Shown: piece by piece, positions 1 to 22,069 of the stretch
Layout: the number at the start of each line of letters is the position of its first letter
Position numbering within the stretch: position 1 is the stretch's first letter
Assembly (NCBI RefSeq): GCF_006345805.1
Contig: NW_021835536.1
Location: forward strand, 1 to 39,311
Origin: Octopus sinensis
Taxonomy: Eukaryota
DNA length: 39,311 nt
Direction: 5' to 3'
The notes under the pieces: model-generated
The model's input: the letters and a program-made list of their open reading frames with translations, nothing else
What the model was told of the DNA's origin: nothing
Databases searched by the model: none
Program-made: the position numbers and the translations under genes

Positions 1-793
1 ATGTGTTCAGCACAGCTAATATTATGGTAGTTCCATGAGCAAACGAAGAAAGATATAACCAAGTCCACTGCCAAATACTAATGACTAATTCATTTCCTGG
101 TCAAATACAATGACTAACTTCCATTAAATAATTTGAACGCAAGAATCAAGACCAAAGGGTGAACACTCAGAAAACTGTGCCTCTTTTAGCATTAATATCA
201 TCTAAAATCTAACAAGAGTGAGAAAAAGAATGACTATATGGATGGTAAATGTTGTTCAAACAATGTAATAAGTGTATATATATATATTACAAACAAGGAT
301 TTGTGAGATCAAGTCACACAGGGAACTCATATTTAATTCCTATCTTTATAATTTATGTCAACACCAATATTTTGTTTAAATGCAAACAGATGTTCACCGT
401 TCAATACTAAATTTGATATTTAATCAACGTTGATGATCATTATACTTATAATCTTAGAGATTTGATTTTTAATTTCTTTAATTTATAACAAAGTTATTCT
501 GACCTGAGACATTCAGGGTACGTACCTAAACAACATATCATGACAGACATCTGGCTACATAACAACAACAACAATAACCTATGAGAAAACTTAGGAAAGA
601 CCTTAGTAGTAAAAGAAACAAAATCTTTCTCGTTAACTCACCTGTTTACAAATAAACAACAAAATGTTTTAGTTCTCTGTCCTAAAAGACATCATTAACT
701 CTATTATGTCTTCTTATTTAACCATTTTACCAACCACGTTAACCTTGATTTTATGAAATTTCAGTGGAATATTTAATAGAATCCTTTTTACAG

Positions 794-1345
794 CTAATGC
801 GGAAACTAGGGATTGACGAGCGATTATAAGAGTTGAAGACCCTGTAGTAAGGTGAGGATCGGCAATGAGTATAGTGAAGAATTCCGGATAGAAGTAGGAG
901 TTCACTAGGGATCATTCCTAAACCCCTCGTTTTCATCATAGTCCACCAGGCAATAAGAGAAATGACAAATCAAAAGCAATTCAAGATCGAAATCAAAATG
1001 AAATTGTAGTTGTGACCGATGCCAGTGCCGCCTGACTGGCACCTGTTCCTGTGTCACGTTATAAGTACCATAGAAGCATAGGTCCTTGTCACTGCCGCCT
1101 GACTAGTTCCCTGTGCCGCTGGCACGTAAAAAGCACCATCCGAACGTGGTCGATGCCAGCCCCCCCCCGACTGGCTCCTGTGTCGGTGGCACGTAAAAAG
1201 CACCCACCACACTCTCGGAGTGGTTGGCATTAGGAATGGCATACATATGTGGAAACCTTGCCAGTCACATTGGAGCCTGGCGCAGCCTACTGCCTTGCCA
1301 GTGAAATCGTCCGACCCATGCCGCCATAAGAAACGGTTAATGATT

Positions 1346-1379
<34 letters not shown>
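794..1379 (+). mobile_element. RTE-clade LINE remnant: RT fragment fused to 3' UTR ending in (GAT)n (unit A1)
   Basis: The + strand reads LMRKLGIDE...SKVRIGNEYSEEFRIEVGVH*GSFLNP, a degenerate RT segment around the GVHQGSVLSP motif. It is followed by a modular 3' UTR and a GTTAA-(TGA)n tail. Absent from the diverged paralogous unit near 15920. Confidence 0.85.
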
Positions 1380-1627
1380 GTTCTGTGACCAATGACAAAA
1401 TTAACTCTATTGTGTCTTCTAATTTGAACATTATTACCAACAGCATTAACCTCAATGGGTATTTCATAACTCTCAGTAAATCGATATCTTTAATTCAATT
1501 ATTATACAGATAATCGTTCAATTGGAAAATAGGAATGGAAGCTGTTTTCAGTTATTCTTTCAAGCACAATATACTCGGGGGAAGAAACCTTACAGAAATC
1601 AATTGGGAACTATTATTTTATACTCAC

Positions 1628-1705
1628 CAATTGCCTGAGATGCAGCCCCTAATTCCTGACATGTAGCCTCTGTTTGTACACACCTGTCTTCAAACTTTGG
1701 AGCCC
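1628..1705 (-). CDS. 78-nt symmetric phase-1 exon, copy 6 in transcription order (APKFEDRCVQTEATCQELGAASQAI)
   Basis: TATTTCAG acceptor, ATTG|GTGAGT donor, open frame; homologous to the exon at 16046-16096; phase matches the RING exon donor. Confidence 0.62.
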
Positions 1706-2353
1706 CTGAAATAAATATTTCCAAGGTTTTACATTTAAAAAGAAACTTTCTTTATCTTTATTTTTATTAAACTCTATCTTGTTATTGAGACATTCAATTC
1801 CTGTCGTTAATGGTCAAATGTTGACCATTATGGTTTGGTCAATATTTCTGTACTTTCTACAGTGGTCCCATGTAATAGCTCAATATGTCCACAATAAAAC
1901 AGACTAACATTCTAAATCCACCCTCTCCCTCTCTCTCTCTCTCTAGAACACATTAAATATTCTAACAATGGCAATTATCTCATTTAATTAACACTTGACA
2001 AGTTTTCTCTTAGCATTGTCTTCTTTTCTTATAACTGCCAAATCTATGGCATGGCACAGTCCTCTCATCTCTAGAATTCACTAATCAACATTCCTCTCTA
2101 ATTAAGTGAAACTGAGCCCATAAAGACATGTCCTTTATGTGCATACCCTCCACCCCGCACACAATCTGTCCCTAAAAATCATCTCCAAGCCAAATTCCAT
2201 ACACCCTTCCCAACATGATCCCTAACAAGATATAAAATGTAAGGTGAGGGTACACGATGTTCCTATGACAAAATAAGTTTACATTTCAGACATACAAATG
2301 TAAGAGAGTTAATGAATTATAGCTTATTAATTATCATGATAATTGGGTATATA

Positions 2354-2919
2354 CACTACCGTCAGAAATTAATTAGCACCCTTGATTTGCTCACCATGAA
2401 GCATGGTGGGGGTGGTCTGATGGTGTGAGGGGCGTTCAGCTACAGTTTGGTTGGGCGGCTCTATGCCGTCGAAGGCAACATCAACGCAGCAAAGTACTTT
2501 GAGATAGTACGGGATACCTCTTTGGTGGCGAGGAGTACGTGCTGGCCAGTCACCTGACCTGAACCCTATTGAGAACCTCTGGAGTCGATTGGGTAGGGAT
2601 TTGAATGTGCAGCAATACAGGAACCGACACGAGCTGTTTGGGGCACTTCTTGCTGCATGAGGGGCCATCCCTGCACAGTACCTGCAGGCACTCATAGACA
2701 GCATGCCGACCCGCGTAGCAGCTGTCATTGCTGCCAAAGGAGGAGCAACAAGATATTGACTAAATTTCACGATTAATATCAATTATGTGGTGTGCTGGGA
2801 TATGTTTTAATAAATTTTTGATTAAAAACAAGTTCGTTTCTGATAAAAGTTAATTAAATTAAGAAAATGTAAGAAAATGTAGAAATTTGAGAAGTGCTAA
2901 TTAATTTCCGACGCAAGTG
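2354..2919 (+). mobile_element. Internally deleted Tc1-family DNA transposon
   Basis: TIRs CACTACCGTCAGAAATTAATTAGCAC / CACTTGCGTCGGAAATTAATTAGCAC and TA duplication. The empty site GGTATATATGT is seen in other units. Transposase remnants KHGGG, PDLNPIENLW and AVIAAKGGATRY*. Confidence 0.95.
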
Positions 2920-3169
2920 TATGTGATAGAATGGCACTGTGCTTGACGGTGCAATACTAGATATCAATATAGATTGTATATAATCTGAGTAAAGAACATA
3001 TAACCTTCATTACTATGAATATGATTGTGTCTCAGCACAGCTAATATTATGGTAGTTCCATGAGCAAACGAAGAAAGATATAACCAAGTCCACTGCCAAA
3101 TACTAATGATTAATTCATTTCCTGGTCAAATAACAATGACTATATTCTATTAAATAATTTGAATGCAAC

Positions 3170-3981
3170 GATGTCGGTGTGCACACAAGGCAGAGTGAAG
3201 AGGCCGGAGAGAAGTGTTAGACATAAGAAGCATCAGATGTGGTGTACAAGAGAGACAACTGCACTGGTATGGTTATGGGTATGGATGAGGAGAATTGTGG
3301 GAAGAAGTGTTACACCCTAACAGTGGAACGAACCCGTGGAAAGGAGTGACCCAGGAAGACAGGGGATGACGTGGTGAAACGACCTTCGAATGTTGGGCCT
3401 CACAGAGGTAATGGCAAGAGACAGGGACCTCTGTAAATATGACGTGATTAAGAGGACCCGGCAAGTGAAGTGAGATCACAGCTGTAGCCTATACCAGTGT
3501 TGCATAACCAGCCCTTTTTAAAAGTACCCTTGAATCACAGAGTGATAAGTTGCGCTTGAGAAGAATTTCTGAGTCAAGTAAAACAAAAAACCAGAAATCA
3601 CAAATCAAAATCAAATCAAGATCGAAATCAAAATGCAAATTGTAATGATGGCCGATGTCAGTGCCGCCTGGCTGGCACCCGTGCCGATGGCACATAATAA
3701 GTACCATTCAAACATTGTTTGTTGCCAGTGCCGCCTGACTGGTTCCCTGTGCAGGTGGCACGTAAAAAGCACCTTCCGAACGTGGTCGATGCCAGCCCCA
3801 ACTTCAACTGGCTCCTGTGCGGTGGCACGTAAAAAGCACCCACCACACTCTCGGAGTGGTTGGCGTTAGGAATGGCATACATATGTGGAAACCTTGCCAG
3901 ATCACATTGCAGCCTGACGCAGCCTACTGCCTTGCCAGTGAAATCGTCCGACCCATGCCGCCATAAGAAACGGATGTTAAA

Positions 3982-4018
<37 letters not shown>
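3170..4018 (+). mobile_element. RTE-clade LINE 3' portion: ORF C-terminus + 3' UTR + (GAT)n tail (unit B1)
   Basis: Degenerate, frameshifted reading ...DIRSIRCGVQERQLHWYG...RPRK...DRDL...KRTRQVK*, typical of an RTE C-terminus; same 3' UTR and tail as in the A units. Confidence 0.88.
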
Positions 4019-4270
4019 GTTCCATGACCAAATGACAAAATTAAGTCTATTGTGTCTTCTAATTTGAACATTATTACCAACAGCATTAACCTCAATGGGT
4101 ATTTCAAAAAATCTTAGTAAATCGATATCTTTAATTCATTATTATACAGATAATTGTTCACAATTGGAAAATAGGAATGGAAGCTGTTTTCAGTTATTCT
4201 TTCAAGCACAATATACTCGGGGGAAGAAAACCTTACAGAAATCAATTGGGAACTATTATTTTATACTCAC

Positions 4271-4348
4271 CTATTGCCTGAGATGCAGCCCCTAATTCCT
4301 GACATGTAGCCTCTGTTTGTACACACCTGTCCTCACACTTTGGAGCCC
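4271..4348 (-). CDS. 78-nt symmetric phase-1 exon copy (APKCEDRCVQTEATCQELGAASQAI)
   Basis: AG/GT intact, 78 nt, open frame. Confidence 0.62.
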
Positions 4349-5898
4349 CTGAAATAAATATTTCCAAGTTTTACATTTAAAAAGAAACTTTCTTTATCTT
4401 TATTTTTATTAAACTCTATCTTGTTATTGTGAGACATTCAATTTCTGTCGTTAATGGTCAAATGTTGACCATTATGGTTTTGGTCAATATTTCTGTACTT
4501 TCTACAGTGGTCCCATGTAATAGCCCAATATGTCCACAATAAAAGAGACTAACATTTCTAAATCCACCCTCACTTCTGTCTCTCTCTCTCTCTCCCTCTC
4601 TCTTTCAAAACACATTAAATATTCTAACAATGTTGCAATTATCTCATTTAATTAACACTTGATAAGAGTTTCCTCTTAGCTTTGTCTTTCTTTTCTTATA
4701 ACTGTGCCAAATCTATGGCATGGCACAGTCCTCTCATCTCTAATTCACTAATCAACATTCTTCTCTAATTAAGTAAAACTGAGGTCATAAAGATGTCCTT
4801 TACGTGCATACGCTCCATCCCACACACAATCTGTCCCCTAAAAATCATCTCCACAACATGATCCCTAACAAGATATAAATGTTAGGTGAGGGTACACGAT
4901 GTCCCTATGACAAAATAAATTTTACATTTCATACATACAAATGTAAGAGAGTTAATGAATTATAGCTTATTAGTTATCGAGATAATTGGGTATATATGTG
5001 ATACAATGGCACTGTGCTTGACGGTGCAATACTGAGATATCAATATAGATTGTATATAATCTGAGTAAAGAACATATAACCTTCATTACTATGAATATGA
5101 TTGTGTCTCAGCACAGCTAATATTATGGTAGTTCCATGAGCAAACGAAGAAAGATATAACCAAGTCCACTGCCAAATAATAATGATTAATTCATTTCCTG
5201 GTCAAATAACAATGACTATCTTTCATTAAATAATTTGAACGCAACAATCAAGACCAAAGGGTTAAACACTCAGAAAACTGTGCCTCTTTTAGCATTAATA
5301 TCATCTAAAAATCTAAGAAGAGTGAGAAAAAGAATGACTATATGGATGGTAAATGTTGTTCAAACAATGTAATAAGTGTATATTATATATAGTTACAAAC
5401 AAGGATTTGTGAGTTCAAGTCACACAGGGGACTCATATTTAATTCTTTTCTTTATATTTTATGTCAACACCAATATTTTGCTTAAATGTAAACATGTTCA
5501 CCGTTCAATAGTAAATTTAATATTTAATCAACGTTAATGATCATTATACTTACAATCTTAGAGATTTGATTTTAATTTATTTAATTTATAACAAAGTTAT
5601 TCTGACCTGAGACATTCAGGGTACGTACCTAAACAAACATATCCTGACAGACATCTGGCTACATAACAATAACAACACAATAACCTATCAGAAAACTTTG
5701 GAAAGACCTTAGTAGTAAAGAAACAAAAACTTTCTCGTTAACTCACCTGTTTACAAATAAACAACAAAATGTTTTAGTTCTCTGTCCTAAAAGACATCAT
5801 TAACTCTATTATGTATTCTTATTTATCCATTTTACCAACCACGTTAACCTTGATTTTATGAAATTTCAGTGGAATATTTAATAGAATCCTTTTTACAG

Positions 5899-6477
5899 CT
5901 AATGCGGAAACTAGGGATTGACGAGCGATTATAAGAGTTGAAGAGGCCCTGTAGTAAGGTGAGGATCGGCAATGAGTATAGTGAAGATTTCCGGATAGAA
6001 GTAGGAGTTCAATAGGGATCATTCCTGAACCCCTCGTTTTCATCATAGTCCACCAGGCAATAAGAGAAATGACAAATCAAAAGCAATTCAAGATCGAAAT
6101 CAAAATGGAAATTGTAGTTGTGACCGATGCCAGTGCCGCCTGACTGGCACCTGTTCCTGTGTCACGTTATAAGTACCATAGAAGCATAGGTCCTTGTCAC
6201 TGCCGCCTGACTGGTTCCCTGTGCCCTGGCACGTAAAAAGCACCATCCAAATGTGGTCGATGCCAGCCCCCACCCCGACTGGCTCCTGTGCCGGTGGCTC
6301 GTAAAAGGCACCCACCACACTCTCGAGGGTGGTTGGCATTAGGAATGGCATACATATGTGGAAACCTTGCCAGATCACATTGGAGCCTGGCGCAGCCTAC
6401 TGCCTTGCCAGTGAAATCGTCCGACCCATGCCACGATAAGAACGGATGTTAAATGATGATGATGATGATGATGATGA
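5899..6477 (+). mobile_element. RTE LINE remnant (RT fragment + 3' UTR), unit A2
   Basis: Near-identical to 794-1379. Confidence 0.85.
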
Positions 6478-6727
6478 GTTCTGTGACCAAATGACAAAAT
6501 TAACTCTATTGTGTCTTCTAATTTAACATTATTACCAACAGCATTAACCTCAATGGGTATTTCATAAAACTCACAGTAAATCGATATCTTTAATACAATT
6601 ATTATACAGATAATTGTTCAATTGGAAATAGGAATGGAAGCTGTTTTCAGTTATTCTTTCAAGCACAATATACTCGGGGGAAGAAAACCTTACAGAAATC
6701 AATTGGGAACTATTATTTTATACTCAC

Positions 6728-6805
6728 CAATTGCCTGAGATGCAGCCCCTAATTCCTGACATGTAGCCTCTGTTTGTACACACCTGTCCTCAAACTTTGG
6801 AGCCC
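6728..6805 (-). CDS. 78-nt symmetric phase-1 exon copy (APKFEDRCVQTEATCQELGAASQAI)
   Basis: AG/GT intact, 78 nt, open frame. Confidence 0.62.
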
Positions 6806-8312
6806 CTGAAATAAATATTTCCAAGTTTTACATTTAAAAAGAAACTTTCTTTATCTTTATTTTTATTAAACTCTATCTTGTTATTGTGAGACATTCAATT
6901 TCTGTTGTTTACTGGTCAAATGTTGACCATTATGGTTTTGGTCAATATTTCCGTACTTTCTACAGGGGTCCCATGTAATAGCCCAATATGTCCACAATAA
7001 AACAGACTAACATTTCTAAATCCACCCTTACTCTCTCTCTCTCTCTCTCTCTAGAAACACATAAAATATTCTAACAACGTACCAATTATCTCATTTAATT
7101 AACACTTGGTAAAGTTTTCTCTTAGCTTTGTCTTTCTTTTCTTATAACTGTGCCAAATCTATGGCATGGCACAGTCCTCTCATCTCTAGAATTCACTAAT
7201 CAACATTCTTCTTTAATTAAGTAAACTGAGGTCATAAAGATGTCCTTTATGTGCATACGCTCCATCCACACACAATCTGTCCCCTAAAAATCATCTCCAC
7301 AACATGATCCCTAACAAGATATAAGATGTTAGGTGAGGGTACACGATGTCCTATGACAAAATAAATTTACATTTCATACATACAAATATAAGAGAGTTAA
7401 TGAATTATAGCTTATTAATTATCATGATAATTAGGTATATATGTAATACAATGGCACTGTGCTTGACGGTGCAATACTAGATATCAATATAGATTGTATA
7501 TAATCTGAGTAAAGAACATATAACCTTCATTACAATGAATATGATTGTGTCTCAGCACAGCTAATATTATGGTAGTTCCATGAGCAAACGAAGAAAGATT
7601 AATGTTTAATTCATTTCCTGGTCAAATAACAATGACTATCTTTCATTAAATAATTTGAACGCAACAATCAAGACCAAAGGGTGAAACACTCAGAAAACTG
7701 TGCCTCTTTTAGCTTTAATATCATCTAAAATCTAACATTGTGAGAAAAAGAATGACTATATGGATGGTAAATGTTGTTCAAACAATGTAATAAGTGTATA
7801 CTATATATAATTACAAACAAGGATTTGTGAGATCAAGTCACACAGGAACTCATATTTAATTCCTCTCTTTATTTTTATGTCAACACCAATATTTTGTTTA
7901 ATGTAAACATGTTCACCGTTCAATACTAAATTTATATTTAATCAACGTTAATGATCATTATACTTACTATCAATCTTAGAGATTTGATTTTTAATTTCTT
8001 TAATTTATAACAAAGTTATTCTGACATGAGACATTCAGGGTACGTACCTAAACAACATATCCTGACAGACATCTGGCTACAATAACAACAACAATAACCT
8101 ATCAGAAAACTTAGGAAATACCTTAGTAGCAAAAGAAACAAATCTTTCTCGGTAACTCACCTGTTTACAAATAAACAACAAACTATTTTAGTTCTCTGTC
8201 CTAAAAGACATCATTAACTCTATTATGTCTTCTTATTTATCCATTTTACCAACCACGTTAACCTTGATTTTATGAAATTTCAGTGGAATATTTAATAGAA
8301 TCCTTTTTACAG

Positions 8313-8866
8313 CTAATGCGGAAACTAGGGATTGACGAGCGATTATAAGAGTTGAAGAGGCCCTGTAGTAAGGTGAGGATCGGCAATGAGTATAGTGAAG
8401 AATTCCGGATAGAAGTAGGAGTTCACTAGGGATCATTCCTAAACCCCTCGTTTTCATCATAGTCCACCAGGCAATAACAGAAATGACAAATCAAAAGCAA
8501 TTCAAGATCGAAATCAAATGGAAATTGTAGTTGTGACCGATGCCAGTGCCGCCTGACTGGCACCTGTTCCTGTGGCACGTTATAAGTACCATAGAAGCAT
8601 AGGTCCTTGTCACTGCCGCCTGACTAGTTCCCTGTGCCGCTGGCACGTAAAAAGCACCATCCGAACGTGGTCGATGCCAGCCCCCACCCCGACTGGCTCC
8701 TGTGTCGGTGGCACGTAAAAGGCACCCACCACACTCTCGGAGTGGTTGGCATTAGGAATGGCATACATATGTGGAAACCTTGCCAGATCACATTGGAGCC
8801 TGGCGCAGCCTACTGCCTTGCCAGTGAAATCGTCCGACCCATGCCACGATAAAAAAAGGATGTTAA

Positions 8867-8900
<34 letters not shown>
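8313..8900 (+). mobile_element. RTE LINE remnant (RT fragment + 3' UTR), unit A3
   Basis: Near-identical to 794-1379. Confidence 0.85.
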
Positions 8901-9148
8901 GTTCTGTGACCAAATGACAAAATTAACTCTATTGTGTCTTCTAATTTGAACATTATTACCAACAGCATTAACCTCAATGGGTATTTCATAAACTCACAGT
9001 AAATCGATATCTTAATACAATTATTATACAGATAATGTTCAATTGGAAAATAGGAATGGAAGCGGTTTTCAGTTATTCTTTCAAGCACAATATACTCGGG
9101 GGAAGAAACCTTACAGAAATCAATTGGGAACTATTATTTTATACTCAC

Positions 9149-9226
9149 CAATTGCCTGAGATGCAGCCCCTAATTCCTGACATGTAGCCTCTGTTTGTAC
9201 ACACCTGTCTTCAAACTTTGGAGCCC
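9149..9226 (-). CDS. 78-nt symmetric phase-1 exon copy (APKFEDRCVQTEATCQELGAASQAI)
   Basis: AG/GT intact, 78 nt, open frame. Confidence 0.62.
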
Positions 9227-9893
9227 CTGAAATAAATATTTCCAAGTTTTACATTTAAAAAGAAACTTTCTTTATCTTTATTTTTATTAAACTCTATCTT
9301 GTTATTGTGAGACATTCAATTCCTGTCGTTACTGGTCAAATGTTGACCACTATGGTTTTGGTCAATATTTCTGTACTTTCTACAGTGGTCCCATGTAATA
9401 GCCCAATATGTCCACAATAAAACAGACTAACATTCTAAATTCACCCTCTCCTCTCTCTCTCTCCTCTTTCTCTCTCTCTCTCTCTCTCTTCTCTCTCTAG
9501 AAAACACATTAATATTCTAACAACGTACTAATTATCTCATTTAATTAACACTTGATAAGAGTTTCTCTTAGCTTTGTCTTTCTTTTCTTATAACTATGCC
9601 AAATCTATGGCATGGCACTGTCCTCTCATCTCTAGAATTCACTAATCAACATTCCTCTCTAATTAAGTAAAACTGAGGTCATAAAGACTGTCCTTTATGT
9701 GCATACCCTCCACCCCGCACACAATCTGTCCTCTGAAAATCATCCTCCACAACATGATCCCTAACAAGTTGTAAAATGTAAGGTGAGGGTACACGATGTT
9801 CCTATGACAAAATAAGTTTTACATTTCAGACATACAAATGTAAGAGAGTTAATGAATTATAGCTTATTAATTATCATGATAATTGGGTATATA

Positions 9894-10459
9894 CACTACC
9901 GTCAGAAATTAATTAGCACCCTTGATTTGCTCACCATGAAGCATGGTGGGGGTGGTCTGATGGTGTGAGGGGCGTTCAGCTACAGTTGTGTTGGGCGGCT
10001 CTATGCCGTCGAAGGCAACATCAACGCAGCAAAGTACGTTGAGATAGTACGGGATACCTCTTTGGTGGCGAGGAGTACGTGCTGGCCAGTCACCTGACCT
10101 GAACCCTATTGAGAACCTCTGGAGTCGATTGGGTAGGGATTTGAATGTGCAGCAATACAGGAACCGACACGAGCTGTTTGGGGCACTTCTTGCTGCATGG
10201 GGGCCATCCCGCGCACAGTACCTGCAGGCACTCATAGACAGCATGCCGACCCGCGTAGCAGCTGTCATTGCTGCCAAAGGAGGAGCACAAGATATTGACT
10301 AATTTCACACGATTAATATCAATTATGTGGTGTGCTGGGATATGTTTTAATAAATTTTGATTAAAAACGAGTTCGTTTCTGATAATAAGTTAATTAAATT
10401 AAGAAAATGTAAGAAAATGTAGAAATTTGAGACGTGCTAATTAATTGCCGACGCAAGTG
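9894..10459 (+). mobile_element. Internally deleted Tc1 transposon, duplicate of 2354-2919
   Basis: Same TIRs, same TA site and same internal deletion, 7540 bp from the first copy. Confidence 0.95.
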
Positions 10460-10709
10460 TATGTGATACAATGGCACTGTGCTTGACGGTGCAATACTAG
10501 ATATCAATATAGATTGTATATAATCTGAGTAAAGAACATATAACCTTCATTACTATGAATATGATTGTGTCTCAGCACAGCTAATATTATGGTAGTTCCA
10601 TGAGCAAACGAAGAAAGATATAACCAAGTCCACTGCCAAATACTAATGATTAATTCATTTCCTGGTCAAATAACAATGACTAACTTCCATTAAATAATTT
10701 GAACGCAAC

Positions 10710-11550
10710 GATGTCAGTGTGTACACAAGGCAGAGTGAAGAGGCCGGAGAGAAGTGTTAGACATAAGAAGCATCAGATGTGGTGTACAAGAGAGACAACT
10801 GCACTGGTATGGTCATGTGTATGGATGAGGAGAGCTGTGGGAAGAAGTGTTACACCCTAACAGTGGAAGGAACCCGTGGAAAGGGGTGACCCAGGAAGAC
10901 AGGGGATGACGTGGTGAAACGACCTTCGAATGTTGGGCCTCACAGAGGTAATGGCAAGAGACAGGGACCTCTGTAAATATGACGTGATTAAGAGGACCCG
11001 GCAAGTGAAGTGAGATCACAGCTGTAGCCTATACCAGTGTCGCATAACCAGCCCTTTTTAAAAGTACCCTTGAATCACAGAGTGATAAGTTGCGCTTGAG
11101 AAGAATTTCTGAGTCAAGTAAAACCAAAAACAGAAATCACAAATCAAAATCAAATCAAGATCGAAATCAAAATGCAAATTGTAATTACGGCCGATGCCAG
11201 TGCCGCCTGGCTGGCACCCATGCCGGTGGCACATAATAAGTACCATTCAAACATTGTTTGTTGCCAGTGCCGCCTGACTGGTTCCCTGTGCCGTGGCACG
11301 TAAAAAGCACCTTCCGAACGTGTCGATGCCAGCCCCAACTTCAACTGGCTCCTGTGTCGGTGGCACGTAAAAAGCACCCACCACACTCTCGGAGTGGTTG
11401 GCGTTAGGAATGGCATACATATGTGGAAACCTTGCCAGATCACATTGCAGCCTGACGCAGCCTACTGCCTTGCCAGTGAAATCGTCCGACCCATGCCACC
11501 ATAAGAAACGGATGTTAAATGATAATGATGATGATGATGATGAGATGATG
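10710..11550 (+). mobile_element. RTE LINE 3' portion, unit B2
   Basis: Near-identical to 3170-4018, with the same 5' junction GAACGCAACG|ATGTCAGTG. Confidence 0.88.
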
Positions 11551-11799
11551 TTCTGTGACCAAATGACAAAATTAACTCTATTGTGTCTTCTAATTTGAAC
11601 ATTATTACCAACAGCATTAACCTCAATGGGTATTTCATAACTCTCAGTAAATCGATATCTTTAATTCAATTATTATACAGATAATCGTTCAATTGGAAAA
11701 TAGGAATGGAAGCTGTTTTCAGTTATTCTTTCAAGCACAATATACTCGGGGGAAGAAAACCTTACAGAAATCAATTGGGAACTATTATTTTATACTCAC

Positions 11800-11877
11800 C
11801 TATTGCCTGAGATGCAGCCCCTAATTCCAGACATGTAGCCTCTGTTTGTACACACCTGTCCTCACACTTTGGAGCCC
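11800..11877 (-). CDS. 78-nt symmetric phase-1 exon copy (APKCEDRCVQTEATCLELGAASQAI)
   Basis: AG/GT intact, 78 nt, open frame. Confidence 0.62.
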
Positions 11878-13430
11878 CTGAAATAAATATTTCCAAGTTT
11901 TACATTTAAAAAGAAATTTCTGTATCTTTATTTTTATTAAACTCTATCTTGTTATTGTGAGACATTCAATTTCTGTCGTTAATGGTCAAATGTTGACCAT
12001 TATGGTTTTGGTCAATATTTCTGTACTTACTTTCTACAGTGGTCCCATGTAATAGCCAATATGTCCACAATAAAAGAGACTAACATTTCTAAATCCACCC
12101 TCACTTCTCTCTCTCTCTCTCTCCCTCTCTCTTTAAAACACATTAAATATTCTAACAATGTTGCAATTATCTCATTTAATTAACACTTGATAAGAGTTTT
12201 CTCTTAGCATTGTCTTTCTTTTCTTATAACTGTGCCAAATCTATGGCATGGCACAGTCCTCTCATCTCTAGAATTCACTAATCAACATTCTTCTCTAATT
12301 AAGTAAAACGGAGGTCATAAAGATGTCCTTTATGTGCATACGCTCCATCCCACAGACAATCTGTCCCCTGAAAATCATCTCCACAACATGATCCCTAACA
12401 AGATATAAGATGTTAGGTGAGGGTACACGATGTCCCTATGACAAAATAAATTTACATTTCATACATACAAATGTAAGAGAGTTAATGAATTATAGCTTAT
12501 TAGTTATCATGATAATTGGGTATATATGTGATACAATGGCACTGTGCTTGACGGTGCAATACTAGATATCAATATAGATTGTATATAATCTGAGTAAAGA
12601 ACATATAGCCTTCATTACTATGAATATGATTGTGTCTCAGCACAGCTAATATTATGTATGTAGTCCATGAGCAAACGAAGAAAGATATAACCAGTCCACT
12701 GCCAATACTAATGATTAATTCATTTCCTGGTCAAATAACAATGACTATCTTTCATTAAATAATTTGAACGCAACAATCAAGACCAAAGGGTGAAACACTC
12801 AGAAAACTGTGCCTCTTTTAGCATTAATATCATCTAAAATCTAACAAGTGTGAGAAAAAGAATGACTATATGGATGGTAAATGTTGTTCAAACAATGTAA
12901 TAAGTGTATATTATATATAGTTACAAACAAGGATTTGTGAGTTCAAGTCACACAGGGAACTCATATTTAATTCCTATCTTTATATCTTATGTCAACACCA
13001 ATGTTTTGTTTAAATGCAAACAGATGTTCACCGTTCAATACTAAATTTAATATTTAATCAACGTTAATGATCATTATACTTATAATCTTAGAGATTTGAT
13101 TTTTAATTTCTTTAATTTATAACAAAGTTATTCTGACCTGAGACATTCAGGGTACGTACCTAAACAACATATCCTGACAGACATCTGGCTACATAACAAT
13201 AACAACAACAATAACCTATGAGAAAACTTAGGAAAGACCTTAGTAGTAAAAGAAACAAAATCTTTCTCGTTAACTCACCTGTTTACAAATAAACAACAAA
13301 ATGTTTTAGTTCTCTGTCCTAAAAGACATCATTAACTCTATTATGTCTTCTTATTTATCCATTTTACCAACCACGTTAACCTTGATTTTATGAAATTTCA
13401 GTGGAATATTTAATAGAATCCTTTTTACAG

Positions 13431-14032
13431 CTAATGCGGAAACTAGGGATTGACGAGCGATTATAAGAGTTGAAGAGGCCCTGTAGTAAGGTGAGGATCG
13501 GCAATGAGTATAGTGAAGAATTCCGGATAGAAGTAGGAGTTCACTAGGGATCATTCCTAAACCCCTCGTTTTCATCATAGTCCACCAGGCAATAAGAGAA
13601 ATGACAAATCAAAAGCAATTCAAGATCGAAATCAAAATGGAAATTGGAGTTGTGACCGATGCCAGTGCCGCCTGACTGACACCCGTGCCGATGACACGTA
13701 TAAGTACCATTCAAGCGTGGTTTGTTACCATTCCGCCTGACTGGTTCCCTGTGCAGGTGGTACGTAAAAAGCACCATCCGAATGTGGTCGATGCCAGCCC
13801 CCACACCGGCTGGCTCCTGTGTCGGTGGCACGTAAAAGGCACCCACCACACTCTCGGAGTGGTTGGCATTAGGAATGGCATACATATGTGGAAACCTTGC
13901 CAGATCACATTGGAGCCTGGCGCAGCCTACTGCCTTGCCAGTGAAATCGTCCGACCCATGCTACTATAAAACGGACGTTAAACGATGATGATGAGGAGGA
14001 GAATGATAATGATGTGATGATGATGATGATGA
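13431..14032 (+). mobile_element. RTE LINE remnant (RT fragment + 3' UTR), unit A4
   Basis: Homologous to 794-1379, with a somewhat more diverged 3' UTR modules and tail. Confidence 0.85.
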
Positions 14033-14281
14033 GTTCCGTGACCAAATGACAAAATTAACTCTATTGTGTCTTCTAATTTGAACATTATTACCAACAGCAT
14101 TAACCTCAATGGGTCTTTCATAAACTCTCAGTAAATCGATATCTTTAATTCAATTATTATACAGATAATCGTTCAATTGGAAAATAGGAATGGAAGCTGT
14201 TTCCAGTTATTCTTTCGCACAATATACTCGGGGGAAGAAAACCTTACAGAAATCAATTGGGAACTATTATTTTATACTCAC

Positions 14282-14359
14282 CAATTGCCTGAGATGCAGC
14301 CCCTAATTCCTGACATATAGCCTCTGTTTGTACACACCTGTCTTCAAACTTTGGAGCCT
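14282..14359 (-). CDS. 78-nt symmetric phase-1 exon, first array copy in transcription order (APKFEDRCVQTEAICQELGAASQAI)
   Basis: AG/GT intact, 78 nt, open frame. Confidence 0.62.
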
Positions 14360-15457
14360 CTGAAATAAATATTTCCAAGTTTTACATTTAATAATAAAAT
14401 TTCTTTATCTTTATTTTTATTAAACTCTATCTTTTTATTGTGAGACATTCAATTCCTGTCGTTAATGGTCAAATGTTGACCACTATGGTTTTGGTCAATA
14501 TTTCTGTACTTTCTACAGTGGTCCCATGTAGTAGCTCAATATGTCCACAATAAAACAGACTAACATTTCTAAATCCACCCTCTCCCCCCCTCTCTCTCTC
14601 TCTCTCTCTTTCTCTAAAAACACATTAAATATTCTAATAATGTTGCAATTATCTCATTTAATTAACACTTGATGACAGTTTTCTCTTAGCATTGTCTTTC
14701 TTTTCTTATAACTGCCAAATCTATGGCATGGCACTGTCCTCTCATATCTAGAATTCACTAATCAACGTTCCTCTCTAATTAAGTAAAACTGCACCCATAA
14801 AGACATGTCCTTTATATGCATACCCTCCAACCCGCACACAATCTGTCCCCTAAAAAACATCTCCACAAGCCAAATTCCATACACCCTTCCCCAACATGAT
14901 CCCTAACAAGATATAAAATGTAATGTGAGGGTACACAATGTTCCTATGACAAAATATGTTAACATTTCATACATACAAATGTAAGAGAGTTAATGAATTA
15001 TAGCTTATTAATTATCATGATAATTGGGTATATATGTGATACAATAGCACTGTGCTTGACGGTACAATACTAGATATCAATATAGATTGTATATAATCTG
15101 AGTAAAGAACATATAACCTTCATTACTATGAATATGATTGTGTCTCAGCACAGCTAATATTATGGTAGTTCCATGAGCAAACGAAGAAAGATATAACCAA
15201 GTCCACTGCCAAATACTAATGATTAATTCATTTCCTGGTCAAATAACAATGACTATCTTTCATTAAATAATTTGAACGCAACAATCAAGACCAAAGGGTG
15301 AAACACTCAGAAAACCGTGCCTCTTTTAGCATTAATATCATCTAAAATCTAACAAGAGTGAGAAAAAGAATGACTATATGGATGGTAAATGTTGTTCAAA
15401 CAATGTAATAAGTGTATATTATATATAGTTACAAAGAAGGATTTGTGTATTCAAGTC

Positions 15458-16380
15458 AAATTCAATTTCTGATTGTATATTTTGTATAAACACCAATAAT
15501 TTGTTTAAATATAAACAGATGTTCATGGTTCAATATTTAATTTAACATTTAATAAAATTAAGTTCATGATGAATATTCTTATACAGAGTTAACATTTAAT
15601 TAGAATTTTCTAATTTACAACTACAAAATGTATTCTAACCAGAGACATTGAGGGTACACAACCCCAGAAAATACAAAATATTACGACAGACATCTGGCTA
15701 CATAACAACATCAAGAATAACCTATCAGAAAACTTACGAAAAATCTTAGTAGAAAAACAAACAACTATTTTATTAACTCACGAGTTTACACCTAAAAAAC
15801 ATAAATTATAGTTCCATAGAAGACAATATTAACTCTATTGTGGCTTTTAATTTATCCATTTTACCAAACATGTTAAACATGACTTTATGAAATTTCAGTA
15901 ATATTTTTAATACAATTACTTTAGAGCTAAACTTTCAAATGGAAATTAGAAATGGGATCTGTTCTCCACCATTCTAATAAGCAAAATAGCTTAGGTGAAT
16001 GTAAAATCTATAGAAATTAATTAAGATCTCTAATTTTAAACTCATCAACTGTCTCTGCCACAGTCTGCATTCCCTTCTCTTCAAACTTTGGACTCTCTGA
16101 AATATGTGTTTCCAAGTTTTATAGTTATTTATAGCACAATTTCTTCATATTTATTAATAATCTATATTTTATTATTGAGAGACATTCATATCATCAATGG
16201 CCAACCAGCGATCATAATGCTTTTGGTCAATTTTTATACTTTCAACAGTGGACCCATGTAATAGCCAATATTTAGCTCCAATACGACTCTAGTTGATCTT
16301 TGTAAATTTCCTCTTTCTGTTAAGATATCCTACATAATCTAACAATGCTGTAATTATATCACATAATAACAGTTAATCTG
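15458..16380. repeat. Diverged paralogous copy of the array unit lacking the RTE and Tc1 insertions
   Basis: Colinear with unit positions ~330-2000 but visibly much more diverged. Keeps GACAGACATCTGGCTACATAACAAC, TTAACTCAC and the exon acceptor region. No LINE insert at ~15925. Confidence 0.88.
16046..16096 (-). CDS. Post-RING exon, 51-nt paralogue of the 78-nt exon ((E)SPKFEEKGMQTVAETV); donor reads AT instead of GT, read-through stops at TAA 16017-16019
   Basis: ATATTTCAG acceptor, phase 1 matching the RING exon. Aligned donor position is GTTG|ATGAGT versus ATTG|GTGAGT in the array copies. Confidence 0.68.
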
Positions 16381-17175: not shown

Positions 17176-17315
17176 CAACTCGACCTCTGCTTGTTACAGG
17201 TTTCAAACACCTCAGGCATCGTTTAAGTGGAACGTTTGAACATTCTTCACATGTCAGAAGGTGTTCACAGGGATGAACTTTTGTTGTGGCCTCTTTATTT
17301 CTGCACAACAAACAT
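17176..17315 (-). CDS. RING-HC finger exon (CLLCRNKEATTKVHPCEHLLTCEECSNVPLKRCLRCLKPVTSRGRV)
   Basis: C-x2-C...PC-x-H-x3-C-x2-C...C-x2-C spacing of the IAP/Mind bomb type; TTTTGTCCACAG acceptor and G|GTAAG donor; 140 nt, phase 2 to phase 1. Confidence 0.93.
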
Positions 17316-19413: not shown

Positions 19414-19589
19414 TGTGGTGGTAAAAATGCTTCTAATTTTCTTCTCAAATTTGGGTCCTTAATGAGGTCCAATGGTGTGTTATTGTTGTTGTTTTTATGG
19501 TGAAAGTCCGCTCCCTGGCTGGCGAGATATCTCGCAACCACTATACCAGAGAGTATTTCCTTCTTTTTCAGGTTAAGGGCAGTACAGCA
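19414..19589 (-). CDS. Exon with a degenerate ankyrin-like repeat linking ANK to RING (CCTALNLKKKEILSGIVVARYLASQGADFHHKNNNNNTPLDLIKDPNLRRKLEAFLPP)
   Basis: TTTGTAG acceptor, CA|GTAAGT donor, 176 nt open; YLASQGAD...TPLDL is ankyrin-like; the phase-2 end joins the RING exon (CA+A = Gln). Confidence 0.9.
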
Positions 19590-21242: not shown

Positions 21243-21442
21243 TTCGTTTAGTTTAAATCCAAGGGTGCACCCTGGAATTAAAAATGTTTTGTTGCCATGG
21301 CTAGGTGCAAACAACTGTTACCTTCACCATCAACAGCATTTACATTTGCACCCAGGGCTATTAACAGGTGTGTCATTCCGAGGTGACCCTGGGAAACGGC
21401 TTCAAGCAATGGTGTCCTTTCCATTTTGTTCTTAATGTCCAA
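21243..21442 (-). pseudogene. Ankyrin-repeat exon with lesions (LDIKNKMERTPLLEAVSQGHLGMTHLLIALGANVNAVDGEGNSCLHLAMATKHF*)
   Basis: Clear ANK motifs (TPLLEAVSQGH, LIALGANVNAVDGEGNSCLHLA); CTTCAG acceptor and GAA|GTAAGT donor. Length 200 nt is not a multiple of 3 and there are two in-frame TAA near the 3' end: real decay or consensus error. Confidence 0.85.
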
Positions 21443-22069
21443 CTGAAGTGAACCCTTTGTGGAAGTAAAAATAGAAAATGAAAATTTACATGAAAATCAG
21501 GATGGATATGAATGTGTCATTATTGTCTTCTACTGTATACTTGATCAAACTGATCATGTACATTTGATGTTTGTCCGTAAAATCAACCTTCGTAAGATCC
21601 TCTAGATGTTGCTATGAGAATGTGTTCTTGACAGGATAAAGATGTCCTAAATAGATTGTTTCAGCTTAATCTACCTTTCTTCCTAACTATAGTAAGTTTT
21701 AGGGGAGCTGAACACGAGTGAACACATGATTAACAGATCAAGACTAGTAAAGAAGAATTGAAATTTCTAAAGTATACTTTTGATGTTGCTATAATTAATA
21801 AGAGGTTCATAAAACTGTTGAGGTGGTTAGTGTCCACCACCATGAAATTAATGCGCGTGCACACACACATACACAGAGACACACTCAAATATAATATATA
21901 TATATATATAATATATATAATATATATATATATGTATATATATAGTGAGAGAGAGAGAGAGAGAGGGAGAGATTTATATACATTACTGTTGGATATATAA
22001 ATATATATGTTGAATGAGGAATATGTAAAATGAAATTCACGAGAAACTTTATCCATCACAACCATTGGT

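What the first reader, a model, noticed from the sequence alone, without database searches (positions are those of the whole stretch)
1628..14359. Six intact copies of a symmetric 78-nt exon carrying an LC8-type VQT motif, downstream of a RING exon: a possible copy-number-variable multivalent tail on an ANK-RING E3 ligase
Seen: each array unit has a minus-strand 78-nt exon (1628-1705, 4271-4348, 6728-6805, 9149-9226, 11800-11877, 14282-14359). All six have intact AG/GT, phase 1 to phase 1, no indel and no stop, although the flanking sequence differs between units by many 1-bp indels. The RING exon ends in phase 1, so any number of copies can be chained in frame, giving (G/E)APK(F/C)EDRCVQTEA(T/I)C(Q/L)ELGAASQAI up to six times. 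DRCVQTE is invariant in all six. Established: dynein light chain LC8/DYNLL1 binds short motifs of about [D/S]-K-x-[T/V/I]-Q-[T/V]-[D/E], and clients such as ASCIZ and Nup159 use tandem sites. Inference: the array may build a multivalent LC8-binding tail, or a set of alternative or mutually exclusive exons, whose dose is set by array copy number.
Basis: partly seen in the sequence, partly recalled or inferred. Interest (0 to 1): 0.75.

Follow-up and report, generated by a model that had tools for sequence, protein, structure and literature searches.

The report
Repeated linker exons in octopus ligase gene
An octopus gene for an ankyrin-RING ubiquitin ligase carries a tandem array of at least six near-identical 78-base exons, copied from the first exon of its own death domain; each encodes a 26-residue floppy spacer with a motif that closely resembles proven binding sites for the dimerising hub protein LC8, though that binding is untested.

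Summary
Six 78-nt minus-strand units sit at exactly the stated coordinates. All have intact AG/GT, are phase 1 to phase 1, are open in one frame only, and keep DRCVQTE. The RING exon (17176-17315) ends in phase 1.

The window is an Octopus sinensis locus: it is 98.9% identical to GenBank contig VCDQ01005797.1, which ends inside the array. The RefSeq model for this locus already chains four of the six exons behind ANK repeats and the RING. In complete paralogs the exons are not a tail. They lie between the RING and a two-exon death domain. RefSeq isoforms differ by exactly one 26-aa exon, or by 17-18-aa modules.

A DNA alignment shows the exons are diverged tandem duplicates of the first death-domain exon.

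LC8 binding is plausible. EDRCVQTE resembles validated binders (SDKGVQTP, EDKGVQCE, RCVSVQTD). The linker is predicted disordered. K-3, V-1, Q0 and T+1 are among the five most conserved columns across 23 module types. It remains unproven: a simple matrix does not separate the motif from non-binding TQT peptides, and one paralog clade has lost Q or T.

Copy number differs between paralogous loci; variation between individuals is not shown.

The parts
1628..1705 (-). Array exon copy 6 (most distal in the window), 78 nt, phase 1-1; encodes GAPKFEDRCVQTEATCQELGAASQAI
   Evidence: sequence, AG/GT, frame. It is the last, partial exon of RefSeq model P0172.
4271..4348 (-). Array exon copy 5; encodes GAPKCEDRCVQTEATCQELGAASQAI
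   Evidence: Used in P0172.
6728..6805 (-). Array exon copy 4; encodes GAPKFEDRCVQTEATCQELGAASQAI (identical to the consensus)
   Evidence: Used in P0172.
9149..9226 (-). Array exon copy 3; encodes GAPKFEDRCVQTEATCQELGAASQAI
   Evidence: It is the first array exon joined to the RING exon in P0172.
11800..11877 (-). Array exon copy 2; encodes GAPKCEDRCVQTEATCLELGAASQAI
   Evidence: Intact, but skipped in P0172.
14282..14359 (-). Array exon copy 1 (nearest the RING exon); encodes EAPKFEDRCVQTEAICQELGAASQAI
   Evidence: Skipped in P0172. The identical exon is used in paralog models P0001 and P0002.
1..15916 (-). Tandem array of 2.42-2.65 kb intron+exon units, 88-96% identical, with 5.1- and 7.5-kb higher-order repeats. 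It runs off the left end of the window; the matching GenBank contig ends 14 nt further on.
16017..16096 (-). Proximal, diverged copy of the exon. It has no donor and reads ESPKFEEKGMQTVAETVDEFKIRDLN-stop, so it is an alternative terminal exon.
   Evidence: RefSeq isoform X3 (P0174) at paralog locus L006 ends in this exon type. Its flanks are homologous to the array unit and to death-domain exon 1.
17176..17315 (-). RING (C3HC4, zf-C3HC4_3) exon, 140 nt; enters in phase 2 and leaves in phase 1
   Evidence: Pfam PF13920 at 28.5 bits.
19414..19589 (-). Ankyrin-repeat exon; encodes CCTALNLKKKEILSGIVVARYLASQGADFHHKNNNNNTPLDLIKDPNLRRKLEAFLPPQ
   Evidence: 100% identical to P0172 residues 211-269 on L007.
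21243..21454 (-). Ankyrin-repeat exon (boundaries approximate). In the window it is broken by an in-frame TAA and a 2-nt insertion; in the GenBank contig of the same locus it is open.
   Evidence: the break. One search shows the three differences are homopolymer-length indels, and L007 reads ...LAMATKHFNSKGAPLDLLNE.

Best explanation
The six elements are real phase-1/phase-1 cassette exons of an octopus-specific gene family with the architecture ANK repeats - RING - variable linker - death domain, which RefSeq names 'MIB2-like'.

Origin: the exons arose by tandem duplication of a roughly 2-2.6 kb block containing the first death-domain exon. They then lost the hydrophobic helix-1 residues of that exon.

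Product: each now encodes a 26-residue, probably disordered spacer. Array copy number, together with exon skipping, sets the length of the RING-to-death-domain linker.

Favoured mechanism (inferred, not shown): each spacer presents one LC8 (DYNLL) site, E-5 D-4 R-3 C-2 V-1 Q0 T+1 E+2. Two ligase chains would be zipped in parallel by a stack of LC8 dimers. That would bring the RINGs and death domains into register, with valency set by the number of exons included.

Shown here: exon anatomy, homology to death-domain exon 1, use in gene models including this locus, predicted disorder in a paralog, and motif conservation across paralogs.

Inferred: splicing in vivo, and LC8 binding and its consequences.

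Confidence by part: about 0.8 that these are genuine, variably included linker exons; about 0.4 that they bind LC8.
For: Identity of the locus:
- The first search hit only Octopus 'MIB1/MIB2-like' proteins, in which the 26-aa unit is chained 1-4 times.
- The window is the same locus as O. sinensis contig VCDQ01005797.1. Its RefSeq model P0172 reads ANK...RING-GAPKF..-GAPKF..-GAPKC..-GAPKF.., which corresponds to window copies 9149, 6728, 4271 and 1628.

Architecture in complete loci:
- L002: RING 16088-16231, three exons, then death-domain exons 27847-27918 and 29460-29657.
- L001: four exons followed by the death domain.
- L008: two 78-nt exons, one 51-nt exon, then the death domain, with two isoforms using different linker sets.
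- P0198, P0193 and P0197 are complete Met-to-stop ANK-RING-linker-death-domain proteins.
- Pfam finds ANK and zf-C3HC4_3, and Death (36.7 bits) in P0001.

Variable inclusion:
- P0170 and P0171 differ by exactly 26 aa.
- P0163, P0028 and P0164 differ by 18 and 35 aa; P0032 and P0166 differ by 17 aa.

Origin:
- The array exon, the proximal exon and death-domain exon 1 (72 nt, also phase 1-1) align together with their intron flanks.

Coding constraint:
- Array-type against proximal-type exon gives pN 0.30 against pS 0.76.
- The V-Q-T codons (GTA CAA ACA against GTG CAG ACT) differ at three synonymous sites and no nonsynonymous site.
- All 22 array-type copies in six loci are gapless.

LC8:
- The published motif is [D/S]K x [T/V/I] Q [T/V][D/E], and the phage-display optimum is VSRGTQTE.
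- Published rules favour an H-bonding residue at -4, a large positive residue at -3 and D/E/P at +2.
- Validated binders include SDKGVQTP (ZFPM1), EDKGVQCE (gephyrin), RCVSVQTD (SON), RHQSVQTE (MAST1) and RDCSTQTE (AMOT).
- The AlphaFold2 model of P0003 gives pLDDT below 50 across the whole linker, residues 54-136.
- Across 23 non-redundant module types the most conserved columns are Q0, P-8, T+1, V-1 and K-3.
- The 17-aa modules leave 9-residue linkers between motifs, the length reported to give homogeneous LC8 stacks.
Against: - No RNA reads could be examined. All splicing evidence is at gene-model level, and the O. vulgaris models may derive from the O. sinensis ones.
- Models at two close paralogs (P0006 and P0009 on L004 and L005) skip the whole array. 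P0172 skips two intact copies.
- Among the young copies the exon evolves like its flanks: pi is 0.034, and there are 9 nonsynonymous against 4 synonymous changes, a ratio of about 0.66.
- The indel depletion is confounded by assembly noise.
- EDRCVQTE scores 11.5 bits in a PSSM built from the LC8Pred set. That is the 30th percentile of binders, and 34% of anchor-containing non-binders score as high.
- Some copies carry VKKE, VQRE or VKTE. One paralog clade has DKAVQAV or EKTVKTV, having lost T+1 or Q0, while keeping P-8, K-3, V-1, V+2, A+3 and E+4. The conserved module is therefore longer than an LC8 site, and not strictly specific to it.
- E and K/R at -4/-3, and V-A at +2/+3, are inherited from the death-domain exon.
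- The death-domain exons of this particular locus are not in the window.
Confidence: 0.45

Rival explanations
1. The exons are genuine and variably included, but the motif does not bind LC8. The linker is either an inert, length-tunable spacer between the RING and the death domain, or it binds something else. Candidates for a different partner are the protein's own ankyrin repeats or a TRAF-type adaptor through TCQE / ASEE / TVEE, which fit [PSAT]x[QE]E.
For: - The conserved module spans about 15 residues, P-8 to V+6, not just the 8-residue LC8 site.
- A paralog clade keeps the module while replacing Q0 or T+1 (VKTV, VQAV).
- The PSSM does not separate EDRCVQTE from non-binders.
- Most 17-aa modules have V at +2, a residue that occurs in four of the listed non-binders (VDRSIQTV, LDQPTQTV, TASGTQTV, FSGSSQTV).
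Against: - The four LC8-critical positions are among the five most conserved columns.
- Several family motifs are 7 of 8 identical to validated binders; EDKGVQTD and ADKGVQTD outscore every non-binder in the set.
- The VQT codons show only synonymous change.
- The TRAF-like tetrapeptide is degenerate and is not conserved across module types. That judgement is my own reading; it was not tested statistically.
Confidence: 0.33
2. The array is mostly evolutionary debris: young tandem duplicates of an exon-containing block that are rarely or never spliced in. They look intact only because they are young. Gene predictors chain them because AG/GT plus an open frame suit the model.
For: - Units are only 4-12% diverged, and exon substitution density equals that of the flanks.
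- The nonsynonymous-to-synonymous ratio among copies is about 0.66, not distinguishable from 1.
- The models at L004 and L005 skip the array.
- One neighbouring exon of another type is frameshifted (L004:17276).
- The assemblies are fragmented and noisy.
Against: - RefSeq isoform pairs differ by exactly one exon.
- Complete open reading frames run RING - exons - death domain at several independent loci in three species.
- Older exon types show pN well below pS, and VQT is conserved.
- All 22 array-type copies keep frame and both splice sites.
Confidence: 0.15
3. The exons are alternatives to death-domain exon 1, in the manner of mutually exclusive exons. They would give death domains with different N-terminal helices rather than a longer linker.
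For: - The array exon and death-domain exon 1 are homologous, of similar length (78 against 72 nt) and in the same phase. This is the usual substrate for mutually exclusive splicing.
- The AlphaFold2 model places low-confidence helices over TEATCQELGAASQAI.
Against: - Every model with a death domain that includes array exons also keeps death-domain exon 1 downstream of them (P0001, P0003, P0004, P0026, P0040, P0193, P0197, P0198).
- The array exons have lost the conserved hydrophobic residues of helix 1: LL became VQ and WW became AS.
Confidence: 0.05

Closest known systems
Multivalent LC8 (DYNLL) clients: ASCIZ/ATMIN, Nup159, KANK1
   Same: A disordered segment carries several [K/R]x[T/V]Q[T/V]-type sites at regular spacing: 18-residue linkers in the 26-aa exons and 9-residue linkers in the 17-aa modules. 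It is flanked by domains that self-associate. The octopus motif follows the published position rules.
   Different: Binding is untested here. The sites are identical copies, each encoded by its own cassette exon in a young tandem array, so valency could change through copy number or splicing. The anchor is VQT rather than TQT. The host is an ANK-RING-death-domain protein.
Single validated V-Q-[T/C] LC8 sites: gephyrin EDKGVQCE, ZFPM1 SDKGVQTP, SON RCVSVQTD, MAST1 RHQSVQTE
   Same: Family motifs EDKGVQTD, SDKGVQTV and EDRCVQTE share 6-7 of 8 residues with these binders.
   Different: Those clients are unrelated proteins. Similarity over 8 residues is a lead, not homology.
Mind bomb E3 ligases (MIB1/MIB2)
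   Same: Ankyrin repeats are followed by a C-terminal zf-C3HC4_3 RING. This is the reason for the RefSeq name.
   Different: The 563-aa family member has no MIB/HERC2 or ZZ domain. It has a single RING followed by a death domain, which MIB proteins lack (the MIB architecture is from my own knowledge).
Tandem exon duplication producing repeated cassette exons (for example titin PEVK or nebulin super-repeats; own knowledge)
   Same: Symmetric-phase exons are duplicated along with their introns. There is higher-order repeat structure, inclusion is variable, and copy number differs between paralogs.
   Different: Here the source exon encodes part of a folded domain (death-domain helix 1), and the copies have become a disordered, motif-bearing spacer.
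Bim / Bmf (BH3-only proteins held by LC8)
   Same: A cell-death-pathway protein carries a [ED]DK x TQT site. BMF has EDKATQTL; family modules have EVKETQTL and KDKETQTQ.
   Different: No BH3 region, no sequence relationship, and multivalent rather than single-site.

Membership tests
LC8/DYNLL client motif | Anchor triplet [T/V/I]-Q-[T/V] at positions -1, 0 and +1 | tested here: met
   VQT is present in all six window copies. VQT anchors occur in the validated binders SDKGVQTP, RCVSVQTD and RHQSVQTE.
LC8/DYNLL client motif | Favourable flanks: an H-bonding residue (often Asp) at -4, Lys/Arg at -3, no bulky hydrophobic residue at -2, Asp/Glu/Pro at +2, and no proline just before the anchor | tested here: met
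   The motif has D-4, R-3, C-2 and E+2, and the nearest proline is at -8.
LC8/DYNLL client motif | The motif lies in an intrinsically disordered region | tested here: met
   The AlphaFold2 model of paralog P0003 (RING + 3 exons + death domain) has pLDDT of 31-43 over residues 54-136. Low pLDDT is only a proxy for disorder, and the test was on a paralog.
LC8/DYNLL client motif | Scores as a binder rather than as an anchor-containing non-binder | tested here: inconclusive
   My own log-odds PSSM, built from 79 binders and 32 non-binders, gives EDRCVQTE 11.5 bits. That is the 30th percentile of binders, and 34% of non-binders score at least as high. EDKGVQTD and ADKGVQTD score about 17 bits, above all non-binders. 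LC8Pred itself was not run.
LC8/DYNLL client motif | Physical binding to the LC8 dimer groove | not testable with these tools
   Needs ITC, fluorescence polarisation or pull-down, or at least a multimer structure prediction.
Mind bomb (MIB1/MIB2) E3 ligases | N-terminal MIB/HERC2 domains and a ZZ zinc finger | tested here: not met
   A Pfam scan of the longest family member examined (P0163, 563 aa) found only ANK families and zf-C3HC4_3.
Mind bomb (MIB1/MIB2) E3 ligases | Ankyrin repeats followed by C-terminal C3HC4 RING(s) | tested here: met
   ANK and PF13920 were found in P0163 and in the window's concatenated exons.
Death-domain proteins | A Death domain (PF00531) downstream of the linker | tested here: inconclusive
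   Met in paralogs: P0001 scores 36.7 bits against a cut-off of 22.6, and death-domain exons were mapped on L001, L002 and L008. It cannot be seen for this locus, because the window and contig end inside the array.
Tandemly duplicated cassette exons | Adjacent homologous exons of symmetric phase with intact splice sites, duplicated together with intron sequence | tested here: met
Tandemly duplicated cassette exons | Transcripts that include different numbers of the exons | tested here: inconclusive
   RefSeq isoforms differ by whole exons. The underlying RNA reads could not be inspected.
Mutually exclusive exon clusters | Exactly one member of the exon cluster per transcript | tested here: not met
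   Models chain 2-4 copies and keep death-domain exon 1 as well.

The most novel reading that the evidence does not exclude
An octopus-lineage innovation in which the first exon of a death domain was tandemly amplified and converted into an array of cassette exons, each carrying one LC8 site. The ANK-RING-death-domain ligases of this family would then be zipped into parallel dimers by a ladder of LC8 dimers. The ladder's length, and so the strength of dimerisation and the RING-to-death-domain distance, would be set genetically by array copy number and post-transcriptionally by exon skipping.
Probability: 0.3. Interest if true: 0.65.

Novelty: new variant of a known kind. Interest (0 to 1): 0.5.

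Why it matters
If the repeats bind LC8, this would be a clean natural case in which the valency of a short-linear-motif array is encoded one motif per exon, in a young tandem array whose copy number differs between paralogs. That would make it possible to follow how multivalent hub-binding regions are born and tuned.

It would also link the LC8 dimerisation hub to a large, undescribed, octopus-specific family of RING/death-domain proteins that plausibly act in cell-death or innate-immune signalling.

Independently of LC8, the locus shows a folded-domain exon (death-domain helix 1) being recycled into a disordered linker by tandem exon duplication.

There is also a practical point. These loci are broken and noisy in current assemblies, and their RefSeq names ('MIB2-like', 'ankyrin repeat protein RF_0381') are misleading.

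Tried and rejected
- Pseudogene reading. I first took the in-frame TAA and the 2-nt insertion in the ankyrin exon to mean the host gene is dead. I dropped this after finding the same locus in GenBank with that exon open, and seeing that the three differences are homopolymer-length indels.
- Indel depletion as proof of selection. It is nominally significant, but differences between the two assemblies, which are mostly technical, avoid the exons just as much. I keep it only as weak evidence.
- dN/dS among the young copies. It rests on 13 changes and gives about 0.66, which is uninformative.
- Contig look-ups for P0002, P0198 and P0193 found nothing on record. So no contiguous O. vulgaris ortholog could be used to count the full array.
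- Literature searches found no description of this ANK-RING-death-domain family or of its linker repeats.
- No protein from a source labelled as transcript-derived contained the 26-aa unit; all hits were genome annotations. The one ENA hit on a 1.4-kb contig (P0119) is a two-RING protein with only one weak module, and is not informative.
- TRAF-type [PSAT]x[QE]E and periodic CPxC readings of the linker were considered. I left them as notes because they are not conserved across module types.
- MIB orthology was rejected on domain content.

Full report
**1. What is in the sequence**

Each is 78 nt, preceded by ...cttggaaatatttatttcag and followed by gtgagtataaaataatag. Each is open only in the frame that gives (G/E)APK(F/C)EDRCVQTEA(T/I)C(Q/L)ELGAASQAI; the other two frames contain stops. 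DRCVQTE is invariant.

They are not independent occurrences. They are the same position in a tandem array of 2.42-2.65 kb units, 88-96% identical, that fills positions 1 to about 15916. The array has 5.1- and 7.5-kb higher-order periods.

Upstream on the minus strand lie three further exons:
- a C3HC4 RING exon at 17176-17315, which ends GTT G|gtaag, that is phase 1;
- an ankyrin exon at 19414-19589;
- an ankyrin exon at about 21243-21454 (Pfam).

Between the RING exon and the array there is a seventh, diverged copy of the exon at 16017-16096. It has no donor site and runs into a stop: ESPKFEEKGMQTVAETVDEFKIRDLN*.

**2. Where the window comes from and what is annotated there**

A protein search with the RING exon plus chained repeats hit only Octopus proteins (O. 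sinensis, O. vulgaris, O. bimaculoides) named 'E3 ubiquitin-protein ligase MIB1/MIB2-like'. In these the 26-aa unit occurs one to four times in series.

The window is the same locus as O. sinensis GenBank contig VCDQ01005797.1. Window 1-39311 aligns to contig 44637-5264 at 98.9% identity.

That contig ends 14 nt beyond window position 1, so the array is cut by an assembly break. 'Six' is therefore a lower bound.

The RefSeq model at this locus is XP_036355812.1, 'putative ankyrin repeat protein RF_0381, partial' (P0172). It joins further ankyrin exons (beyond the right end of the window), the two ankyrin exons, the RING exon and then four of the six 78-nt exons. In window terms these are copies 9149, 6728, 4271 and the first 45 nt of 1628. 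So the exons are already annotated as coding at this very locus.

**3. A correction to my own first reading**

In the window the ankyrin exon at about 21243-21454 contains an in-frame TAA and a 2-nt insertion relative to four related loci. I first read this as a pseudogene.

In the GenBank contig of the same locus the exon is open (...LAMATKHFNSKGAPLDLLNE). The three differences are all homopolymer-length indels, with no substitutions nearby.

Over the whole window the two assemblies differ by 178 indel events but only 113 substitutions. That ratio points to technical error in one of them. I therefore do not call the gene broken.

**4. The array is a linker, not a tail**

In loci that are assembled through, the 78-nt exons are followed by a two-exon death domain.

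| Locus | Species and record | RING exon | Linker exons | Death-domain exons | Models |
|---|---|---|---|---|---|
| L002 | O. vulgaris | 16088-16231 | 17765, 19834, 21954 | 27847-27918; 29460-29657 | P0003 uses three exons, P0004 two |
| L001 | O. sinensis | not on contig | four exons | 11903-11983; 14327-14533 | P0001 |
| L008 | O. sinensis chromosome scaffold | 8859-9003 | 78-nt exons at 11843 and 13922; 51-nt exon at 14284 | 18928; 20549 | P0197 and P0196 use different linker sets |

Complete Met-to-stop proteins with the architecture ANK - RING - linker - death domain include P0198, P0193, P0197 and P0028.

Pfam finds ANK families and zf-C3HC4_3, and Death in P0001 at 36.7 bits against a cut-off of 22.6. 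It finds no MIB/HERC2 or ZZ domain, so the family is not Mind bomb despite the name.

An exhaustive profile search found 334 relatives at E up to 0.001. Of those I looked up, all that carry the linker modules are Octopus proteins.

**5. Variable inclusion**

RefSeq isoforms differ by whole linker exons:
- At L006, X1 and X2 differ by exactly one 26-aa exon. X3 ends in the proximal exon type that the window carries at 16017-16096.
- In O. bimaculoides, X1, X2 and a third isoform differ by 18 and 35 residues. Another gene's isoforms differ by 17 residues.
- At two paralogs 94-96% identical to the window (L004, L005), the models skip the array altogether.
- Array-type copy number per locus is 3 (L002, L004), 4 (L005), at least 4 (L001), at least 2 (L006) and at least 6 (window and L007).

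All of this is gene-model evidence. I could not inspect RNA reads.

**6. Origin**

The array exon, the proximal exon and the first death-domain exon were aligned with about 100 nt of flanking intron on each side. They are homologous throughout.

All share the ...TAAAACTTGGAAATATTTATTTCAG acceptor context and the GGTGAGTAT...AATTGATTTCTATA donor context. Death-domain exon 1 is also phase 1-1 and is 72 nt long.

At protein level ESPVLKERDLLRVAK--RLGRDWWQI aligns with EAPKFEDRCVQTEAICQELGAASQAI. So the linker exons are tandem duplicates of the exon encoding the start of the death domain. They have lost the hydrophobic helix-1 residues: LL became VQ and WW became AS.

**7. Is there selection on the exons?**

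Among the young copies, not detectably:
- Nucleotide diversity in the exon is 0.034, the same as in the neighbouring intron (0.01-0.04).
- The 13 distinct changes in 13 copies are 9 nonsynonymous and 4 synonymous, a ratio of about 0.66.

The exon does lie in the longest gap-free run of the unit, and only 2.4% of 78-column windows are gap-free. But the differences between the two assemblies avoid the exons to the same degree: 0 of 112 fall in an exon, against 3.3 expected. So sequence context and assembly noise explain much of this signal.

Over the longer term there is constraint. Array-type against proximal-type exons have pN 0.30 and pS 0.76. The three anchor codons differ only synonymously: GTA CAA ACA against GTG CAG ACT. 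By my rough estimate, the chance that three random changes in those codons are all synonymous is about 0.02.

All 22 array-type copies in six loci keep the frame and both splice sites. A neighbouring exon of another type is frameshifted at L004:17276.

**8. The LC8 idea**

The published natural motif is [D/S]-4 K-3 x [T/V/I]-1 Q0 [T/V]+1 [D/E]+2, or [K/R]xTQT. The phage-display optimum is VSRGTQTE (PMC3078936).

The LC8Pred study states that binders tend to have an H-bonding residue at -4, a large positive residue at -3 and a strand-breaking P/D/E at +2. Charged residues in the anchor abolish binding (PMC6607443). EDRCVQTE meets each of these rules.

The LC8Pred training set contains VQT- and VQC-anchored binders that are very close to the family's motifs (gephyrin also in PMC12057147):
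- ZFPM1 SDKGVQTP
- gephyrin EDKGVQCE
- SON RCVSVQTD
- MAST1 RHQSVQTE
- AMOT RDCSTQTE
- BMF EDKATQTL

Family modules include EDKGVQTD, ADKGVQTD, SDKGVQTV, EDKEVQTV, EEKGVQTV, EVKETQTL and KDKETQTQ, always between the RING and the death domain.

Three further points favour LC8:
- An AlphaFold2 model of P0003 gives pLDDT below 50 across the whole linker.
- Over 23 non-redundant module types the most conserved columns are Q0 (3.5 bits), P-8 (3.3), T+1 (3.1), V-1 (2.8) and K-3 (2.7).
- Motif spacing is 18 residues in the 26-aa exons and 9 residues in the 17-aa modules. The latter is the inter-motif length reported to give homogeneous LC8 assemblies in ASCIZ (PMC10046861).

**9. Reasons for caution on LC8**

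- A simple log-odds matrix built from the 79 binders scores EDRCVQTE at 11.5 bits. That is the 30th percentile of binders in leave-one-out scoring, and 34% of the 32 anchor-containing non-binders score at least as high. Only EDKGVQTD, ADKGVQTD and KDKETQTQ clearly exceed the non-binders.
- Some copies have VKKE, VQRE or VKTE. One clade has DKAVQAV or EKTVKTV, and so has lost T+1 or Q0, while keeping the rest of the 17-residue module.
- The acidic and basic residues at -4 and -3 are inherited from the death-domain exon.

I put LC8 binding at about 0.4, and the claim that these are genuine, variably included linker exons at about 0.8.

**10. Verdict**

Three corrections apply:
- It is a RING-to-death-domain linker, not a tail.
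- It derives from the first death-domain exon.
- The indel argument is weak.

The exons themselves are already in RefSeq. What is not described anywhere I could search is the family architecture, the origin of the repeats and the LC8-type motif. I rate it a new variant of a known kind, namely a multivalent short-linear-motif linker made by tandem exon duplication, and of moderate interest.

Noticed in passing
window 25144-34821 (-): A non-LTR retrotransposon sits in the long intron upstream of the ankyrin exons. It has an 819-aa reverse-transcriptase ORF (27424-29880), an endonuclease split by a frameshift (29811-30681) and an ORF1-like region with a CCHC knuckle (31212-32048). About 1.5 kb of its 3' part is present three times (25144-26693, 26688-28200, 32930-34467), and each copy is bordered by AGAT/GATA microsatellites.
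   Followed up: partly
window 36641-38969; also 24181-25350 and 34828-35469: Very long microsatellites: (ATC)n of about 2.3 kb, (ATAG)n of about 1.2 kb and (GATA)n of about 0.6 kb. The (ATC)n block is also present in the paralogous loci L004 and L005.
   Followed up: no
window 2278-2782 and 9818-10299: A Tc1/mariner transposase remnant (…SPDLNPIENLW…) lies inside two of the six array units. The two copies are 99% identical over 300 nt and 7540 nt apart, matching the three-unit higher-order repeat. The insertion therefore predates that duplication.
   Followed up: partly
window 1019-1204 and 3649-3840 (and the same position in other units): A 67-bp minisatellite (2.8-2.9 copies) and an (ATG)n run recur inside each array unit. 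Their nature was not examined.
   Followed up: no
whole window against L007 (GenBank VCDQ01005797.1): The two versions of this locus differ by 178 indel events, 127 of them of a single base type, against 113 substitutions. Three of the indels break the ankyrin exon in the window only. One of the assemblies carries substantial homopolymer error.
   Followed up: yes
window 16017-16096 against L003-L006: The proximal terminal exon reads GMQT in the window but GVQT in L003-L006 and in RefSeq isoform X3. In L003 a deletion shifts its frame after QTVAE.
   Followed up: partly
L004:17276-17383: In one O. vulgaris paralog, the slot between the proximal exon and the array holds a different linker-exon type (ASPKFADKGVQTDLQLLEP..., as in P0036 and P0055). 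It carries a frameshift, so it is a decayed exon.
   Followed up: partly
proteins P0038 and P0050 (O. vulgaris; species of P0050 not looked up): In one paralog clade the 17-aa linker modules read ECP(K/R)C(K/R)EK.VKTV.ESF. That gives a CPxC pair every 17 residues (CxxC-x13-CxxC), which looks like a string of zinc knuckles rather than LC8 sites.
   Followed up: no
protein P0059 (O. bimaculoides adhesion-GPCR-like, 1283 aa) and P0051: Death domains of the same subfamily also occur at the C-terminus of a large LRR/GPCR-type receptor, and behind long (STSQQ/EPSTSQH)n repeats. The death-domain module with a repetitive pre-domain linker is therefore reused in other architectures.
   Followed up: no
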